Shown: in pieces, positions 10,922 through 49,200 of the stretch
Layout of the letters: each line of letters opens with the position of its first letter
Position numbering within the stretch: position 1 is the first letter of the stretch
Source of the DNA: Epiperipatus broadwayi
Lineage: Eukaryota; Animalia; Onychophora
DNA length: 64,000 nt
Reading direction: 5' to 3'
Assembly (NCBI GenBank): GCA_028023455.1
Contig: JAQFVV010000009.1
Location: 11,346,001-11,410,000 of the forward strand
Program-made: the position numbers and the translations under genes
The notes under the pieces: generated by a model
What the model saw: only the letters and a program-made list of their open reading frames with translations
What the model was told of the DNA's origin: nothing
Databases searched by the model: none

Positions 10922-13900
10922 ATTTCAAAGGATAAACTTTATTGTATTCTAAAAGGTTATACAAGTTACATTTGACAACATAGTTCTTATATATAAATTG
11001 TTTTCGCAAAACTGCATATGTACAATGATTTGATCAGTGACTGTATGCAATATCCAACTAGAAGTATCTAAGAAAAAAAACAGTTCAACAAAGTCAGTGA
11101 TGATCATTCAATCATACGATAATATTCAATTATACTTCAATTAAATTAAAGCAGGAATGCATCTAATTTGTGTCAGTTGACTTCAGAACTGGCACAAGGA
11201 TCCATGTTAGATATAGTTTGTGTTAGTGCTTTTATATAAGTTCTTGTATATTCCAGGTGTCAATGTACTTAGATTGATCTGTAATTTTCATGTCTCTTTC
11301 ACGTATGGTTTGCAGCTTATTTCTGAACATGTTTGGATGTCTTCTGGGGTTATAATTGAATATGAAATTACACCTTGTACACCATAAGGCATAGAGTAAA
11401 AATGTGCAGATTCTTATTTCAGCAAAGATACCCCTTTTAAAAGAGCCAAAAAGGGTTTTCATATTGATTTTTCTATCCTTGAGTGAAGTGCTAATAATTT
11501 CACGAATGTTTCTAGACTTGAGCATGAGAAAAAAAGGTGGTTTTGTGTCTCCGAGTCCCTATGGCAAAGATTACATATATCATCTATATCTTTATAGTTT
11601 CTTTGATATTTCAAAAAGTGTTGTGTAGGTAGCGAGTCCAGATTTATCTTTAGGAGAAAGTCAAAATATTTTGGTTCAAGTGACCATAGTTTGAATTTGC
11701 AACATAATTGTTTGAATTTGCAACATAATTGTTTATTGTTAATATGAAGTTGATTTTGTACATCATCTTGATTTGGATGTAGAAGTTGATAAACTTCCCA
11801 ATATTTATATTTGGCTTGTGGTGGTTTAAAGATAAGAGTGTGGATTGTTAATAATGGTGTATGTAGTGTGTTCAGATATCCCTGGAGAGGAGGTGGTCTA
11901 TCTGTAGGGGTAATCTTGACAGATATTTCTAAATATGGGAATTTTTGTCCACATGTAGATATTATGTTCAATGTTTTTTGTATCCTGAACACATGTATTG
12001 AGTGAAGGCCAAGGCCATTTTGTGAAAGGGGTTTTCTTAGACGTTTTACTGATATTGAGATAATCTTTTTTCCCCAGAATAATTTCCTGCATAAGGAGTC
12101 GATCTTATTTGTAAACGCCTTGGTATAAATGATTGTTGGAGTAAAATAAGAGATTTTTGTAATCACTAGCATGTTAAGGAAAACCATTTTTGTATATATA
12201 AAGAGGTAGGCTTTGGAGAGTGAATTGACAGTCTTTTCCACTTTCTGTATCAAATTTTTCTGTATGAGCGATCTCATAGGTGAATGATGTAAATAAAAGT
12301 TGAACCCAAGAAATGCGTTTGGTCTACCTTTGAAAACTTTAGTAAAGCTATTACCAGTGAAGATCTGGCATGCACACGATTTCTCCATATTAAATGTTAG
12401 CTTATATTCTTTTGTAAAATTGTTAAGTATCTTAAAAAGTTTGGGAATTTGTTTTTGGGATGATAGAAATACTGCTATATCATCCATATATGCAATACAC
12501 AAGATGTTGTCGTTGATGGTAGGCACATAGACTCCTGAAAACTCATTTTCTAATAAGAGGGTTGATATAGGCAGTGAACAATAAGGCACTGAGAGATGAG
12601 CCCTGGGGAATGGACAGATGTGGCACTATTGATGGTGAAGATTTCCCATTTAGGGAAACATAAATCTCACGGTTTAAAAGTAAGTTAGCAAGCAAGTTTA
12701 GATAGGCATTGGGGACTGAGTATTTTTGCAGAGTTTTAAGAAGAGTACTGATGGAAATCATGTCAAAAGCAGCTTCAATATCTAGTTGAATAACAATTGG
12801 ACTGTATTTTTTATTATCTCTAACAGTTTCAATAGTTGACTTGATAGAAAGGCTGCCTGTCTTGTTGAGGATTCTTTTTTGGAAAATTGCATTTTTGATA
12901 GGTTTGGAAAAATGAATGGCTCTATTTTATCTTTTATCACTGATTCTATTATCTTTATGCCAAGGGAGCACATTGAAATTGGACATAGGTTAGTGATGTT
13001 TGAGATTAATTGTTTCTTTTTCATGAATGGCACAAGCATAATTTGATTTAAGCCCTGTATTTTATAGATGTCTTTAGTGAGGTAGGAGACTAGGTTAATC
13101 ATATATTGTGCAGCGATTTTATTAATATGTTTGTATATAAACTTGGGAATTCCATCTATGCCAGGATGATATGAATCTGGCATCGCTTCTATTTTTTTAA
13201 TGAAATCTTTTAAATAAATTTTAAATTCACTTTCTGATCTATCTTGTGAAAAGGCCATTAGACTTGGTGAGGAGACCCTCTGGAATTTTTCTCTATACAA
13301 TATGTAAAGCCGCTCCAACATAAAATCTCTGTAGACAATTTCAGTTTGAACTTTAATAGCTGTTGGGACTCACACCTGGGAGGGGTGGCCTAGCACCCAT
13401 TTAATGAAATTTCTGGTATACATGTATGGCTTATTTAAATATAACCTTTTATTTTTAATGGAGATATATTATTTAAGCTGGTTTGTTAACTCTTGATATG
13501 TCTTCTTTAAAACTATCAGACAGAGACGATCGAGATTTGATTGAGAAGTGCCAATAATTTTTTTATAGGTATCGTCCATAAGCTTTAGTAGTTTTGTTGG
13601 GGGGTGTTGTTGTCCTGGTAAGATGATCAATGTTAAATGAAAGCAGATTAGTAAAAGCACACCATGCTTGGACTGGATCCATTGTAATATTCTTCAACTT
13701 GTGAAGATATATGTATACTTCTGAAAAAAGATATTTTGGTGTGCGTGATGGTAGTAGAACTCTGATGGTTCTTCCTGTATTAATTGTTGTTCTATTATCA
13801 AAATTAATTTCCAGTGACACTAAAACAGCTGCATGATCAGAGAGGGGGGAATTCTTTAATTGAATGCATATCATGTTATGTAATGATGGCGAATAGAAAA

Positions 13901-28800: not shown

Positions 28801-31269
28801 ATAGTCCAGTTAAGACCTTTTAATATATATATATATATTACAGCTCTAATGAAGTCTGTTGGACATTCAAAACTGTGAGCCGCTAAATAATAACAAAGAT
28901 AATACTTTGCATTTAAAAGAGTGTATAAGAAAAAGGTGTTTTATTTATTTACTTATATTAATACATAATTTTATATTTTTTATAAACACAATGATTTTAT
29001 AAATATATAACAATAAAATTTATGATGGATTAAATATAAATTTTATTATTTTTACTCTATATTGCTATGTATATGTATGTGTCTGTAATTTATGGAGTTA
29101 TTATGCAATAAAATACTAAGATTAAGTGATAGTCCTTAATTATTACTGATGTTAGTTCAAAATTTCTGTATTTAGAGTTAGATAATAAACTTTAATAATT
29201 CTTTTCTGTCATTAACATGCAGAATTGTGGAATATTAATTACAAAAGTTAATATAAAATATAACTTTATAACAAGGATATATAATATTTAGAAAAGCTTC
29301 TTCTTTTTTTTTGGCAAATATTTTTATTTCTTTTTTAATGCAATTGCAATCTACTTTAACCTTTAATTCACATTACATACATAGCAATATGTGTTTATAT
29401 ATATAATTAATCAGAACTAAACATGATAAAGTTATAAACATAACAAAAGCTAAATGTATTAATTATTCAATACATATATTATATATTAGATTCACAAGAA
29501 ATATAGATACAAAAGATAACAATTATTAAAAATTTTAAATACATAATGCAAATAAAAGTATAGCCAATTTACAAAAGAAACATTTTATTGAGTTATACAA
29601 AAACTATGGATATAATCCCAAAAATATTTAAAATGTACACGATTCTAATAAAAACAACATTTGTATTCTAAATATTTGTAATTATAACAATAATTCTAAT
29701 AAAAAATGGATTAAGCTTTCATAGTATCTTAAAATATATAATACATTAATAATAAATAAAAATTATATAGATAAAAACTAATATACAATGGTCAGATAGT
29801 AAAAATCTACATAAATTAATATGTAATTATAAAATAAATTTGTATAAAGTCTAAAAAAGGAATTGTATATAAAATTGTGGAAATTGTAATATGATTTACT
29901 ATTGACATACAGCGAATCATTAGATGAAAGAGCAAAAGAATATAACAATGCAATTAATAAAAGACTTGATGATTATGCTTTATAAATTTACTATTTAAAA
30001 TATGGACATAAAATATATTGTAAAAAATAAATTAAACCTTTTAACTACAGTAAATAATCTAATAGAATGAAAATATGTCAAAGTAGTGATATACAACAAA
30101 AATAATTGTATGACTATATATAAAACATCAATAAATTTAATTAATAATTGCTCAAATAAAAATGAATGAAAAATTATATAGTACATATATATTTTTGCAT
30201 AGTATGCATTTTATACAAATTGTTATGTGCTGTATAATTGTTAGGTGCTGTATAATTAATACATTTCACTTTTGTTATGTTTGTAAGTATTTAGATTGTT
30301 TTATAATTATTTTATTATTGGTTCTGAGTATTTTTATATATTTTAATAAATGTAACTATATATGTAATATAAATTAAAGATCAAAATTGATTTAAATTAC
30401 GTTGAGGAGAGTTTAAAAATATTTTTTGAAAAAAGCTTCTTTTCTTGTGTTTTAGAATTGAGAGTCCCACATGATTGAATTATTCCATCTGATTGGCTTT
30501 CATGTAAGCATGTTTAAAGCGTATCTGTTTGAAAGTGTTTAGCTTTCACGTTATTACAATATTATCTGTTTGCGCTTAAAATTTGATTTATTTACATATA
30601 TATACTGTATATATACTGTTATAATGATATTTTATATTATTTAATTGAAATTAATGACAAAACTTCATAGTGGATTACATTTATGTTGACAGATTTATTT
30701 TATGATAAATAAATACTATTATATAAGAAAATTTATAATAATAATGCTCTAATAATAATTTAGTTAATTTGAAATTGTAATAAATCTAAACAGGTTCTAT
30801 GCAGGTAAGGTTTTTAAAGAGAATAACTAAAATGTGATTGTTTTGATAATCAAAAAATAACATAATTCTATTTTATATATTATTTTTATGCATAAGTAGA
30901 GTGCTTACTTATTTCTGCTTGTGATTAAATTATGAACTTTATTATGAAATAACCTAATTTACATATTTATTTTATTTTTACAAATGGCAGTTCATTTTTA
31001 TAGTAATATATATATATATAATTTTCATTTTAAAAATAGTTTATTTATTTGCCTATATACTGGTTTTTTATAAACTTAATTTTTAAATTAACCTAATGAA
31101 ATTTATTCATATTGTTAACACAAGAAATGACTTCAACATTAATATCTATAGCAGCAGCATCTCCAAGTTGCAGAATACTCATGGACATCATCCATACAAT
31201 ATCATTGTATGTGAACTTTAACTCTTCATTCTTCTGTCCTTTTTGATGAGAGGTATTTTGTGTTTGTAG

Positions 31270-31377
31270 CATGTAGTCCAGTGCGTGATAGTAGCCGTAA
31301 AAACTATAGGGAACATCATGTTGGTGACCTTCTTGCTACAGTTTATGTTCGCTGTCATAGGAGTTCAACTTTTTAAG
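31270..31377 (+). CDS. Ca-alpha1D: Cav1 L-type calcium channel alpha-1, domain III S4-S5 linker and S5 exon, variant A (mutually exclusive)
   Basis: AG/GT-bounded 108-nt phase-0 exon encoding [36 protein letters not shown], recognisable as Cav1 IIIS5. Confidence 0.95.
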
Positions 31378-31414
31378 GTAGGCAATTAAGTAAAATTCAT
31401 TGTCTTCTCTTTAG

Positions 31415-31522
31415 TATGTAGTCAAGTGCGTGATAGTAGCTGTGAAAACTATCGGCAATATCATGTTGGTCACCTATCTTCTGCAGTTCATGTTTGCCGT
31501 CATTGGAGTGCAGATGTTCAAG
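31415..31522 (+). CDS. Ca-alpha1D: Cav1 alpha-1 domain III S5 exon, variant B (mutually exclusive)
   Basis: AG/GT-bounded 108-nt exon encoding [36 protein letters not shown]. It differs from A at 4 of 36 residues and at many synonymous sites. Confidence 0.95.
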
Positions 31523-31593
31523 GTAACGCTAAACACAATGCAATATGATACACTTGCCAATTAGTACTGCCTGGCATCTGCATATTGATGTAA

Positions 31594-31666
31594 TGCATGT
31601 CATTGCATGGCCAGCTTTAGTGAAGTAGGTGAATCAGATCAATGCTTGGCTATGTCACCATGCATG
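31594..31666 (+). promoter_or_regulatory. Cluster of three TGCATG (Rbfox-type) intronic splicing elements
   Basis: TGCATG at 31594, 31604 and 31661, downstream of exon B. Confidence 0.55.
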
Positions 31667-31810
31667 CTCTGTTTGTTCAGTGTGCTTTAGTGATTTGTCT
31701 AATAATATAGATTCATGCACTTGTAATTTGCTATCTACCCATGATGCCATGTCAAGTCTTTGTTTTATAACTAGAGAAACGTTGATCTTTATCTTTTTTT
31801 TACTTTACAG

Positions 31811-31863
31811 GGAAAATTTTTTGTTTGTAATGATCCAGCAAAGATGACTAAAGAGGAGTGCAG
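31811..31863 (+). CDS. Ca-alpha1D: Cav1 alpha-1 domain III S5-P loop exon (53 nt, ends in phase 2)
   Basis: Strong acceptor (..tttactttacag) and donor (CAG/gtaagg). Encodes GKFFVCNDPAKMTKEEC(R), in frame with either upstream exon. Confidence 0.93.
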
Positions 31864-34684
31864 GTAAGGATTTTAGTAAGACTAGAAAAAATGCCATGAA
31901 ATTGAAAAATAATATTACTTCATTTTATATATTGTTCTTAATACTTTACTAATATTTAAAGTTTTTTTCTAATATTATTTATAACATAATGTTCTTTAAC
32001 TCCTCTCAGTGATTTATATCAGTGATGAGAGAAACAGATTAAAGTGCATACAGATTCTGTATGAATCCCATCTGAGGAGAAAAAACAGGTAGACTAATTG
32101 AAATGAAATTCTGTGTTCAAAATCTCTCAACTTTTTCAGTTCAAGCAATTTTGAATAATTTTTTTAATGTGGAAGAAACTAAGAAAATTTTAGTTTTCAT
32201 TTTATGGGCTATTTGCAAATCAATTTATTATATTAATATTAACAAGTCTGTAAAGAATGTTACTTTGTTTTATGTTCTTCTCTTAATATTTTACTTTTTA
32301 AATTAAAATATATATTTAATTTACTAATATTTAAAACTTTTTGTAATAGTATTTATATCACAATCTTATTCTTATTCATCAAAGAAATTGGCATTGATAT
32401 AAGAATAGTTGGACATTATTTGCAAGTTTATTTGATTCTTTAGGATCTGGTTTGTGTATTATCATAGTAACATTTTCAGATTTGATTGTCTGTGAATAGA
32501 TTTATCTATTTTATATTTATAAGAGAATTAAGATTAAGGAGATCCTTGACATGAAGCTTTAAAAAAAATTATTTTTCAGGAAATAAGGTAAATCTTTAAA
32601 GTGAAATGATCATGAAATGCTTATTATATTTCTAATAAAAATTAATTTGACTGTTTGTGTTGTTCAATCATTTTATAGTTTTATATCTTATTTAGAGAAT
32701 CACAAGTGTTATTTTTAGCTTGTTTCATTCCTTAATTATGGTTTATTGATAATAAATAAAATATAAGTAAAAAACGTTTATATAAACCAGTTAACGTGAC
32801 TGAAGACAAATTTATAATATTATTGCATTTTAGAAGAACAACTTTTGACTAAGGTAGTTCAATATTCCAAGTATTAAAAATCATTGAATTATAACTAATA
32901 ATGATAATAATAATAATAATTATGATAACGAATAATAAAAAATAATTAATATTAGTAAAAATATAATTCTAGTTTATACATTACATTAACTAATAATGTG
33001 CAAATTATAATTAGTTATTAGCCATACAATTATACTATTGAAATTATAATGTTGATATGCAATAGTTAACTTGAGAAAAGACTAATTTCCATTATTACTT
33101 CAATTTATTGTAATATATTTTAACTAATATTGGTAAGAATTCTACATGATAACATAACTAGTTATAATCAAATAAATATTATTTTTAATATATTGAGACC
33201 ATTATGTGTCTCATGGCATAGAACAACATAGTAGTCTGTCTGCATATATATATATAAAGTTGAAAGGAAAAGTAGAAATAACCACAAACAAAATTTTTTG
33301 TAGATATCTTTTATATTACACCAGAATAACAGTTAAGGATTAAAATTATTATAAATTATTTTTAATCAAACATTTAAAAAGGTCTAATTAACATTTTATT
33401 AATTCTAATTTTGAAATTAAAACATGTGTGTTTTATACTACAATAGATATACTGGTAATTATAAAATTCCACTATTTATTTTGATTTAAAAAAACATTTT
33501 GATTAAATCTTGTATAACATATTTTGATAAAAATCCTACAAAATTGTTTTTGAAAAGATTAATGTGAATTAAAAAGTCATTAACTTTTTTCAATTAAGAG
33601 AAAGAAACTTATTTTTAATTACTAAGTTTTTTTAAAATTCCACCTGGACTGTAAAAAAGTTGGAAAAAAAGATTACAAGGGAGATTATGACAATTTTACA
33701 GTAGTAGAGTTATTATAAAGATATAGCTAAGGGCAAAATAGTGCAAGGCAGTTGCTTCTAGTGTCACAACAATAGAGTATGGATTTACATGGAAGTAAAA
33801 AATATTTTCTGTGTTCTCCATAGTCCATATTGTGTACTAGATGCTTATGCATGAAGTCTACTAAATTCTAGACTAAATGGATCTGATTGAATGTCAACAG
33901 TTACCAGATTATATCTTTCCTGAAAATGATGAGCCAGTCTGCATATACTGTTTTATCTATATGCAGATAAGCACAGATAAAGGTATTGCATTGTATATAT
34001 ATATATAAAGTACAGCTGGTGAATAGAGTGTGATACATATATTGAGAATATTATTTTAAATAATTTCTTGAAAATGACAGTTAAACTCTAATTTAAAAGT
34101 AAAACAAGTAAATAATTTTTGCTTGAATTATAAGTCTAAAACAAAGGATTGATTGGTAAACAATTTTATGTTGTTTTCTATTCCCTCATGTCAGCCACAT
34201 GTTGGTGCTATTTCTAGGTCAATTCCTAGAAATGTACTGTTTCAGTGGCCTACATTCAACCTAAGAGGCTTTTTTATGATAAAACAAAGAAAGAGTCCTC
34301 GCAGTGGCCTCAGCCAACCTAAGAGGCTTCTTTCTATGATAAAACTCAGAAAGAATCCCCACCAGCTGAGCCAGTCTGGCTTTTTTTATGCTAAAAGCAC
34401 AGACAAATAGCCTTATTGGCTGCTGTAGTTGGTTGTGTTATTAAATTTATCATAATCCTAGAATGTCTATTTTCTCTATACTTTCATGTGAGAGAGTGTG
34501 GATTTTAGCCTGTCATAATTATTTAAAATTTCATGACAAAGGTTTTTTTCAAGTGCTCTAACCAACTGTTGGGTAACCCCCAATAATGCTTTTAAGGGTG
34601 CAGTAGAGCAGTATTTTGACAATCATGTGAAAAGTAACATTTTCACGAGAATTTGCTCATGACAAATTACTTTTGATATATATG

Positions 34685-43905: not shown

Positions 43906-49200
<5,295 letters not shown>

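What the first reader, a model, noticed from the sequence alone, without database searches (positions are those of the whole stretch)
31270..31522. Mutually exclusive Cav1 IIIS5 exons locked by a 37-nt intron
Seen: two 108-nt paralogous exons with intact splice sites and mostly synonymous divergence (H/Y, Q/K, F/Y, L/M are the only amino-acid changes), separated by only 37 nt (31378-31414). Because each is a multiple of 3, double inclusion would not shift the frame or trigger NMD. Established: introns this short generally cannot accommodate U1 and U2 simultaneously, the steric mechanism known for tropomyosin MXEs. I recall similar HVVQC/YVVKC isoforms in insect Ca-alpha1D, so the exon pair itself is probably ancient. 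Inference: exclusivity here is enforced purely by steric hindrance, and the substitutions lie in the S4-S5 linker and S5, which tune gating and drug sensitivity.
Basis: partly seen in the sequence, partly recalled or inferred. Interest (0 to 1): 0.75.

Follow-up and report, generated by a model that had tools for sequence, protein, structure and literature searches.

The report
Calcium-channel twin exons, 37-base spacer
A velvet worm's L-type calcium-channel gene carries two alternative copies of one small exon only 37 bases apart, an ancient pair shared with insects, centipedes and horseshoe crabs; the tiny gap very probably stops both copies from entering the same message, which is a known kind of splicing lock.

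Summary
Exon A (31270-31377) and exon B (31415-31522) are each 108 nt with phase 0 at both ends. They share 32/36 residues. Of 22 base differences, 17 fall at third codon positions (dS 1.86, dN 0.069). A 37-nt GT..AG spacer separates them. Both encode the domain III S4-S5 linker/S5 of a Cav1 channel (Cav1.1 residues 916-951).

The genome is Epiperipatus broadwayi (Onychophora). The gene spans more than 527 kb. A, B and the next exon (31811-31863) form a 594-nt island between introns of about 68 kb and 80 kb.

Exon B groups with the arthropod Y..K..Y exon (support 97/96), so the duplication predates the onychophoran-arthropod split.

The steric reading is plausible. Any branch point in the spacer lies about 21 nt from A's donor, and the seven shortest introns I measured in this genome are 71-87 nt. 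"Purely steric" is not shown. Termite host contigs hold the same pair about 1.4 kb apart, and insect annotations list A-only and B-only isoforms, so another selection mechanism exists in relatives.

No RNA data could be reached. This is a new member of a known kind. The scan had not noted it before on other DNA.

The parts
31240..31269 (+). 3' splice region of exon A: candidate branch motif TTGAT (31243-31247, A at 31246), a T/G-rich tract, and AG at 31268-31269
   Evidence: Read from the sequence. The motif assignment is by consensus only.
31270..31377 (+). Exon A (H..Q..F type), 108 nt, phase 0/0; encodes the end of the domain III S4-S5 linker plus S5 of Cav1
   Evidence: It has the same boundaries as in many animals.
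31378..31414 (+). 37-nt GT..AG spacer between A and B. In A's frame it reads GTA GGC AAT TAA, so retaining it would put a stop at the fourth codon.
31396..31400 (+). Only YTNAY-type branch-point candidate in the spacer (TTCAT, A at 31399). It lies 21 nt after A's donor and 15 nt before B's acceptor.
   Evidence: Read from the sequence. Consensus match only, not mapped.
31415..31522 (+). Exon B (Y..K..Y type), 108 nt, phase 0/0; orthologous to the arthropod B exon
   Evidence: In the tree all B exons form one group (97/96).
31523..31810 (+). 288-nt intron between exon B and the next constitutive exon
31594..31666 (+). Three sense-strand UGCAUG hexamers (31594, 31604, 31661), 72-139 nt downstream of B's donor; a candidate Rbfox-type enhancer cluster
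   Evidence: There are 16 such hexamers on the + strand in 64 kb, and this is the only 288-nt stretch of the window that holds 3.
31811..31863 (+). Exon C, 53 nt (GKFFVCNDPAKMTKEEC..), the common downstream partner of A and B; donor GTAAGG
   Evidence: It matches the sequence that follows FK in all Cav1 proteins.

Best explanation
These are two mutually exclusive versions of the exon for the domain III S4-S5 linker/S5 of the single Cav1 (L-type) calcium-channel gene of the velvet worm Epiperipatus broadwayi. They are orthologous to the H..Q and Y..K exons of arthropod Ca-alpha1D. The upstream IIIS4 exon lies about 68 kb away. It is spliced either to A, whose donor then joins exon C so that B is removed inside the lariat, or to B, whose donor joins C. 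A-to-B splicing is blocked because the spacer is only 37 nt. A branch point inside it is at most about 21-30 nt from A's donor, too close for U1 and U2 to assemble together. A branch point upstream of it would lie outside the intron. With such large flanking introns, recognition is probably by exon definition. In that case U1 on A's donor and SF1/U2AF/U2 on B's branch site and pyrimidine tract would collide, so defining one exon would exclude the other at the first step. Reading through the spacer gives a 253-nt exon with a stop at the fourth spacer codon, which nonsense-mediated decay would probably remove. Which exon is chosen is set by something else, possibly factors bound to the 288-nt downstream intron. 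Shown here: the anatomy, selection on both copies, orthology, and the short-intron floor of this genome. Inferred: exclusivity in this species, the steric block, and the exon-definition collision.
For: The genome is identified by the exact scaffold number and size in PMC9985152. Both copies are under purifying selection (dS 1.86, dN 0.069). The B exon groups with arthropod B exons at 97/96 support. The same A-then-B order occurs in Limulus, Strigamia, Timema, Drosophila, Anopheles, Bombus, Periplaneta and others. Relatives have A-only and B-only isoform models, and one insect mRNA-like contig joins IIIS4-A-C without B. The shortest introns found in conserved genes of this genome are 71, 75, 77, 79, 82, 86 and 87 nt, and none is close to 37. 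D. melanogaster Ca-alpha1D is annotated with mutually exclusive exons 15/16 (PMC4174434) and with two tandem-exon substitution events (PMC9741552). Short donor-to-branch distance is an accepted cause of exclusivity (PMC5740500).
Against: There is no RNA evidence for this species. The intron sample is small (n=7) and cannot exclude rare ultra-short introns. Spliceosomes of some other animals do remove introns of about 40 nt (my knowledge). In insects the same pair sits 1.4 kb or more apart, so a short spacer is not needed for alternative use. Many insect gene models, including RefSeq isoforms, contain A and B in tandem, which shows either annotation error or real leakiness there. The branch point is a consensus guess. 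The assembly is nanopore-based, so the spacer length could be off by a base or two, which would not matter.
Confidence: 0.7

Rival explanations
1. Exclusivity is set mainly by an inherited mechanism that does not depend on spacer length, such as competing RNA pairings or tissue-specific splicing factors like Rbfox. Under this reading the 37-nt spacer is an incidental, lineage-specific state: either a small target that transposons never hit, or the original 145-nt duplication period. It adds little.
For: Termite contigs have the orthologous pair 1401-1436 nt apart, and other insect contigs show no partner within 0.7-3 kb. A-only and B-only isoforms are still annotated there. Three UGCAUG motifs cluster just downstream of B. 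Other short introns (71-288 nt) persist in this transposon-inflated genome, so shortness alone is not evidence of selection.
Against: No significant local RNA structure was found (z = -0.69). The inverted repeats around the exons are at chance level. The UGCAUG cluster is absent from the termite and ant loci. Whatever else acts, a 37-nt intron is still physically unfavourable for splicing, so the steric block would operate anyway.
Confidence: 0.2
2. The 37-nt spacer is spliced as an ultra-short intron and both exons are included together, as many automated insect gene models imply.
For: GT..AG ends and a pyrimidine tract are present. Tandem A+B proteins are predicted in many arthropods.
Against: The product would carry two S5 helices in domain III and invert the topology of the pore loop. 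The shortest introns measured here are 71 nt or longer. The donor-to-branch distance would be about 21 nt. A-only and B-only isoforms exist in relatives.
Confidence: 0.04
3. One of the two copies is a dead pseudo-exon that is never used.
For: None beyond the lack of RNA data.
Against: Both copies keep open frames and intact splice sites. They differ at 17 third-position sites but at only 4 residues. B keeps the three diagnostic residues shared with arthropod B exons after more than 500 million years.
Confidence: 0.03
4. The short spacer is an assembly artefact, that is, intron sequence lost in the nanopore assembly.
For: The assembly is from 26x ONT data. Frameshifted matches are common elsewhere in the genome.
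Against: The two exons are only 80% identical, so a collapse is unlikely. Both frames, both splice sites and a coherent pyrimidine tract are intact. No second copy of the locus exists.
Confidence: 0.03

Closest known systems
Arthropod Ca-alpha1D (Cav1) domain III S5 alternative exon pair (H..Q / Y..K), annotated as mutually exclusive exons in Drosophila melanogaster
   Same: The exon length (108 nt), phases, A-then-B order and diagnostic residues are the same. The B exons form one clade.
   Different: The host here is an onychophoran. The spacer is 37 nt, against about 1.4 kb in termites and more than 0.7-3 kb in other insect contigs. The flanking introns are 68 and 80 kb. I could not verify that the D. 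melanogaster exons 15/16 named in PMC4174434 are this pair.
Rat alpha-tropomyosin exons 2/3: steric-hindrance mutually exclusive splicing, where the branch point is too close to the upstream donor
   Same: Two adjacent alternative exons whose intervening intron cannot be spliced because the donor and branch point are too close. In both cases exclusivity is independent of reading frame.
   Different: In tropomyosin the intron is longer and the cause is an unusually distant branch point. Here the whole intron is only 37 nt. The tropomyosin case is experimentally proven, and this one is not (my knowledge; the mechanism is also listed in PMC5740500).
Vertebrate CACNA1C/CACNA1D mutually exclusive exons (8/8a for IS6, 21/22 for IIIS2, 31/32 for IVS3)
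   Same: They are tandem duplicated exons that swap one transmembrane segment of an L-type channel.
   Different: [quoted passage not shown] Their control involves PTB and other factors, not a short spacer.
Docking-site/selector RNA-pairing systems (Dscam1, 14-3-3zeta, Mhc)
   Same: They have the same outcome: one exon is chosen from a tandem array.
   Different: No conserved or significant pairing was found here. That mechanism may apply to the insect orthologues with long spacers, which I did not test.

Membership tests
Cav1 (L-type) calcium channel alpha-1 subunit, domain III S4-S5/S5 exon | The best sequence matches are Cav1 channels at the IIIS5 position, not Cav2, Cav3 or Nav channels | tested here: met
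   Cav1.1 residues 916-951 at E 6e-13, and Cav1.2 and Cav1.3 at about 1e-11. Nav1.7 scores only 0.007.
Cav1 (L-type) calcium channel alpha-1 subunit, domain III S4-S5/S5 exon | The exon is embedded in a colinear set of other Cav1 exons | tested here: met
   colinear exons lie along C9:11137254-11664923, including IIIS4 upstream and the IIIS5-S6 loop downstream.
Cav1 (L-type) calcium channel alpha-1 subunit, domain III S4-S5/S5 exon | The S5 dihydropyridine-contact residues Thr and Gln (Cav1.1 T935, Q939) are present | tested here: met
   Exon positions 20 (T) and 24 (Q) are present in both A and B. The residue roles are taken from PMC10981686.
Panarthropod Ca-alpha1D IIIS5 A/B exon pair | Two tandem 108-nt phase-0 exons, with the H..Q type first and the Y..K..Y type second | tested here: met
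Panarthropod Ca-alpha1D IIIS5 A/B exon pair | The B exon is orthologous to arthropod B exons, not an independent duplicate | tested here: met
   all 11 B exons form one group, UFboot 97 / SH-aLRT 96, and 94% of bootstrap trees recover it. There are only 36 columns, so the internal order is unresolved.
Panarthropod Ca-alpha1D IIIS5 A/B exon pair | Transcripts carry A or B but not both | not testable with these tools
In relatives there are A-only, B-only and also A+B models, plus one A-only mRNA-like contig.
Steric-hindrance mutually exclusive exons (tropomyosin type) | The donor-to-branch-point distance in the intervening intron is below the minimum for spliceosome assembly (about 45-50 nt in the studied systems) | tested here: met
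   The whole intron is 37 nt, and the only YTNAY motif puts the branch A 21 nt from the donor. The threshold comes from the literature (PMC5740500 uses less than 50 bp).
Steric-hindrance mutually exclusive exons (tropomyosin type) | The spacer is shorter than any intron the same organism normally removes | tested here: inconclusive
   The seven shortest introns found in conserved genes are 71-87 nt. The sample is too small to exclude rare shorter introns.
Steric-hindrance mutually exclusive exons (tropomyosin type) | Lengthening the spacer allows double inclusion | not testable with these tools
   This needs a minigene experiment.

The most novel reading that the evidence does not exclude
The 37-nt spacer may be more than a block on A-to-B splicing. 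It may make the exon-definition complexes on A and B physically incompatible, with U1 on A's donor colliding with SF1/U2AF/U2 on B's acceptor. That would give a hard-wired binary switch at the first step of spliceosome assembly. It may also be the preserved 145-nt period of the original duplication, older than the onychophoran-arthropod split. Insects would then have expanded it to kilobases and evolved a different, possibly leakier control, which would explain why their annotations contain A+B models.
Probability: 0.15. Interest if true: 0.55.

Novelty: new member of a known kind. Interest (0 to 1): 0.35.

Why it matters
The finding dates a functionally important alternative-exon pair of the L-type calcium channel to before the split of velvet worms and arthropods, more than half a billion years ago. 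It also offers a natural contrast within one orthologous pair: a 37-nt spacer in the onychophoran against kilobase spacers in insects. That contrast could be used to test how far steric hindrance alone can enforce either/or splicing, and how the control mechanism changes when an intron expands. A practical point also follows. Many public arthropod Cav1 protein models, including RefSeq isoforms, contain both exons in tandem and so carry a duplicated S5 helix that is probably wrong.

Tried and rejected
Spacer lengths in chelicerates and myriapods are therefore unknown.

2. Scans of genome contigs and viral contigs with the A/B alignment found nothing. Only metagenome contigs gave host-derived loci.

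3. I tried to name the organism from a reverse-transcriptase ORF in the window. The best hits were 41% identical or less and unnamed. The organism was instead identified from the assembly statistics in PMC9985152.

4. Local RNA structure was checked by folding 31230-31560, which gave z = -0.69. The inverted repeats in 30700-32400 are short, AT-rich and at chance level, including a 12-nt pairing of B's acceptor with exon C. I rejected both as evidence.

5. An 89-nt similarity between 30800-30888 and exon C's donor region suggested an upstream duplicate exon, but no exon-like frame is there.

6. The Hatje and Kollmar 2013 paper and the supplements of the genome paper are not held. The supplement of PMC9741552 lists Ca-alpha1D but gives no exon sequences.

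7. The Pfam proteasome search added no short introns. The tubulin hits were frameshifted or intronless.

Full report
OBSERVATION

Exon A occupies 31270-31377 and exon B 31415-31522. Each is 108 nt and each begins and ends in phase 0. Each is preceded by a pyrimidine-rich tract ending in TAG, and they are followed by GTAGGC and GTAACG. The spacer 31378-31414 is 37 nt.

The peptides differ at four of 36 positions (H/Y, Q/K, F/Y, L/M). The 22 nucleotide differences fall 4/1/17 on codon positions 1/2/3. A Nei-Gojobori count gives dS 1.86 (saturated) and dN 0.069. Both copies have therefore been kept by selection for a very long time, with no recent homogenisation. The repeat finder sees the pair as a 114-nt direct repeat with period 145, and the homology stops 3 nt outside each exon.

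IDENTITY AND CONTEXT

Exon A matches residues 916-951 of rabbit Cav1.1 (E 6e-13), and the same stretch of Cav1.2 and Cav1.3. This is the end of the domain III S4-S5 linker plus S5.

The window is C9:11346001-11410000 of a 5,601,407,764-base assembly in 18,588 pieces. The published Epiperipatus broadwayi (velvet worm) assembly has 5,601,407,943 bp in 18,588 scaffolds (PMC9985152), so this is that genome.

Colinear Cav1 exons lie along C9 from 11137254 to 11664923, a span of more than 527 kb. The IIIS4 exon (ending ..RAINRAKGLK followed by GT) is at C9:11308854-11308946, which is 68.3 kb upstream of exon A. A 53-nt exon C (31811-31863, GKFFVCNDPAKMTKEEC) follows B after 288 nt. The next exon is about 80.5 kb further on. 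A, B and C thus form a 594-nt island between two very large introns. The rest of the window holds retrotransposon remains.

AGE AND DISTRIBUTION

A scan of 1.8 billion protein representatives with exon A returned many fragments of two types, H..Q and Y..K. It also returned gene models that contain both types in tandem from Timema, Limulus and a moth. A region search with a spider Cav1 showed the same tandem H..Q then Y..K..Y arrangement in Drosophila species, Anopheles, Bactrocera, bees, ants, sawflies, beetles, butterflies, bugs, cockroach, termite and the centipede Strigamia. Molluscs, fishes, a rotifer and a nematode show only the H..Q type in the sequences returned.

In a maximum-likelihood tree of the 36-residue exons, all eleven B exons, including the velvet worm's, form one group (ultrafast bootstrap 97, SH-aLRT 96, recovered in 94% of bootstrap trees). 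With only 36 columns nothing else is resolved. The three shared derived residues (Y1, K4, Y21) make an independent origin unlikely. The duplication therefore predates the onychophoran-arthropod split.

Published work lists D. melanogaster Ca-alpha1D as having mutually exclusive exons 15/16 (PMC4174434) and two tandem-exon substitution events (PMC9741552). I could not confirm that one of these is this pair.

IS THE SHORT SPACER CONSERVED? NO.

The metagenome scan returned 80 host-derived loci. Six termite-gut contigs (L022, L023, L025, L031, L043, L044) hold both exons with spacers of 1401-1436 nt. Ant-garden and other insect contigs show A with no B within 0.7-3 kb downstream, or B with no A within 0.2-1.5 kb upstream.

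RefSeq-type isoform clusters of Drosophila, Blattodea, Neodiprion and Bactrocera contain A-only, B-only and also A+B tandem models, and in Neodiprion models with neither exon. One insect mRNA-like contig (L009) reads IIIS4-A-C without B. Alternative use of A and B in insects therefore does not rest on a short spacer. The tandem models are either annotation errors or signs of leakiness.

In some other animals A and C are one exon with no intron between them (L054, L067).

CAN THIS GENOME SPLICE 37 NT?

I looked for the shortest introns in conserved genes by searching Pfam families against the genome and then reading the junctions. The exact lengths found were:

- 75 and 87 nt in myosins;
- 79, 82 and 86 nt in CCT subunits;
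- 77 nt in ATP synthase beta;
- 71 nt in HSP90.

All of these have GT..AG ends and T-rich 3' ends. None is near 37, but a sample of seven is small.

Inside the spacer the only YTNAY motif is TTCAT. Its A is at 31399, 21 nt from A's donor and 15 nt from B's acceptor. The accepted steric rule, proven for tropomyosin exons 2/3 and used as a criterion of less than 50 bp in PMC5740500, says such a distance does not allow U1 and U2 to assemble on the same intron. If B's branch point instead lies upstream, inside exon A, it is outside the A-B intron and A-to-B splicing is equally impossible.

MECHANISM PROPOSED

The IIIS4 donor pairs with either A's or B's acceptor. A's donor can only reach C's acceptor, and B's donor likewise. 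A-B joining is sterically excluded.

The flanking introns are 68 and 80 kb, so exon definition is likely. U1 on A's donor and the branch-site/pyrimidine-tract factors of B would occupy overlapping space, so defining one exon would exclude the other. This step is inference.

If A's acceptor and B's donor were used together, the 253-nt product would carry a TAA at the fourth spacer codon and should be degraded. This step is also inference.

What chooses between A and B is unknown. Three UGCAUG hexamers lie 72-139 nt downstream of B. Only 16 occur on this strand in 64 kb, and by my own Poisson estimate the chance of three in a given 288-nt stretch is about 6e-5, or roughly 0.01 after allowing for the 222 stretches in the window. 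They are a lead for Rbfox-type control, but they are not seen in the termite or ant loci.

No significant RNA structure was found.

FUNCTION OF THE DIFFERENCES

Positions 1 and 4 lie in the S4-S5 linker, and positions 21 and 34 lie in S5. The two S5 residues that contact dihydropyridines in Cav1.1 (T935, Q939; PMC10981686) correspond to exon positions 20 and 24 and are the same in A and B. Only the neighbouring position 21 (F/Y) differs. An effect on gating is plausible. An effect on drug binding is speculative.

VERDICT

This is an ancient mutually exclusive exon pair already known from insects, found here in an onychophoran with an unusually short spacer. That spacer very probably blocks double inclusion by a known mechanism. 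'Purely steric' is not established, and the comparison with insects argues for additional controls.

LIMITS

- No RNA data or second onychophoran genome could be reached.

Noticed in passing
window 31594-31666: Three sense-strand UGCAUG hexamers lie within 73 nt, just downstream of exon B. This is the only such cluster in the 64-kb window and is a possible Rbfox-type splicing enhancer. The motif is absent from the equivalent termite and ant introns.
   Followed up: partly
window 30800-30888 versus 31859-31940: An 89-nt stretch 1 kb upstream of exon A is 71% identical to the end of exon C plus its donor and downstream intron (both contain TGCAG|GTAAGG). No exon-like frame precedes it. It may be a relic of a partial duplication or a chance match in AT-rich DNA.
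   Followed up: partly
proteins P0159-P0212, P0340-P0409 (public arthropod Cav1 models): Many public gene models, including RefSeq isoforms of Drosophila, Anopheles, Bactrocera, Bombus, Neodiprion, Periplaneta and Cryptotermes, contain exons A and B in tandem. That would give two S5 helices in domain III, so this is likely a systematic annotation error or evidence of leaky splicing.
   Followed up: partly
L006:3001-3493 and L007:925-1625 (metagenome host contigs); P0194 (acoel Convolutriloba); P0157: Other, unnamed animals carry two H..Q-type copies of the same exon 277-485 nt apart. An acoel model has two in tandem. This suggests independent tandem duplications of this exon outside arthropods.
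   Followed up: no
L067:3001-3170, L054:3001-3170: In some animals exon A is fused to the following exon with no intron and no B exon, so the intron that hosts B is not universal.
   Followed up: no
window 44503-46040 (- strand) and 11462-13369 (- strand): There are long open reverse-transcriptase frames of non-LTR retrotransposons. The one searched has no relative above 41% identity among 5.8 billion proteins, which reflects how poorly onychophoran repeats are represented.
   Followed up: partly
G000 contigs C6197:1228937-1229489, C6268:6223264-6223676, C166:2245240-2245700, C12405:2362652-2363285: Several tubulin matches are split by single frameshifts without introns. These are either processed pseudogenes or indel errors of the nanopore assembly, so caution is needed when reading frames in this genome.
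   Followed up: no
window 31378-31383 and L022, L055, L081 donors: Exon A's donor reads GTAGG in the velvet worm, termites, ants and another insect, while exon B's reads GTAAC in the velvet worm and termites. This may be a conserved sub-optimal donor pattern.
   Followed up: no
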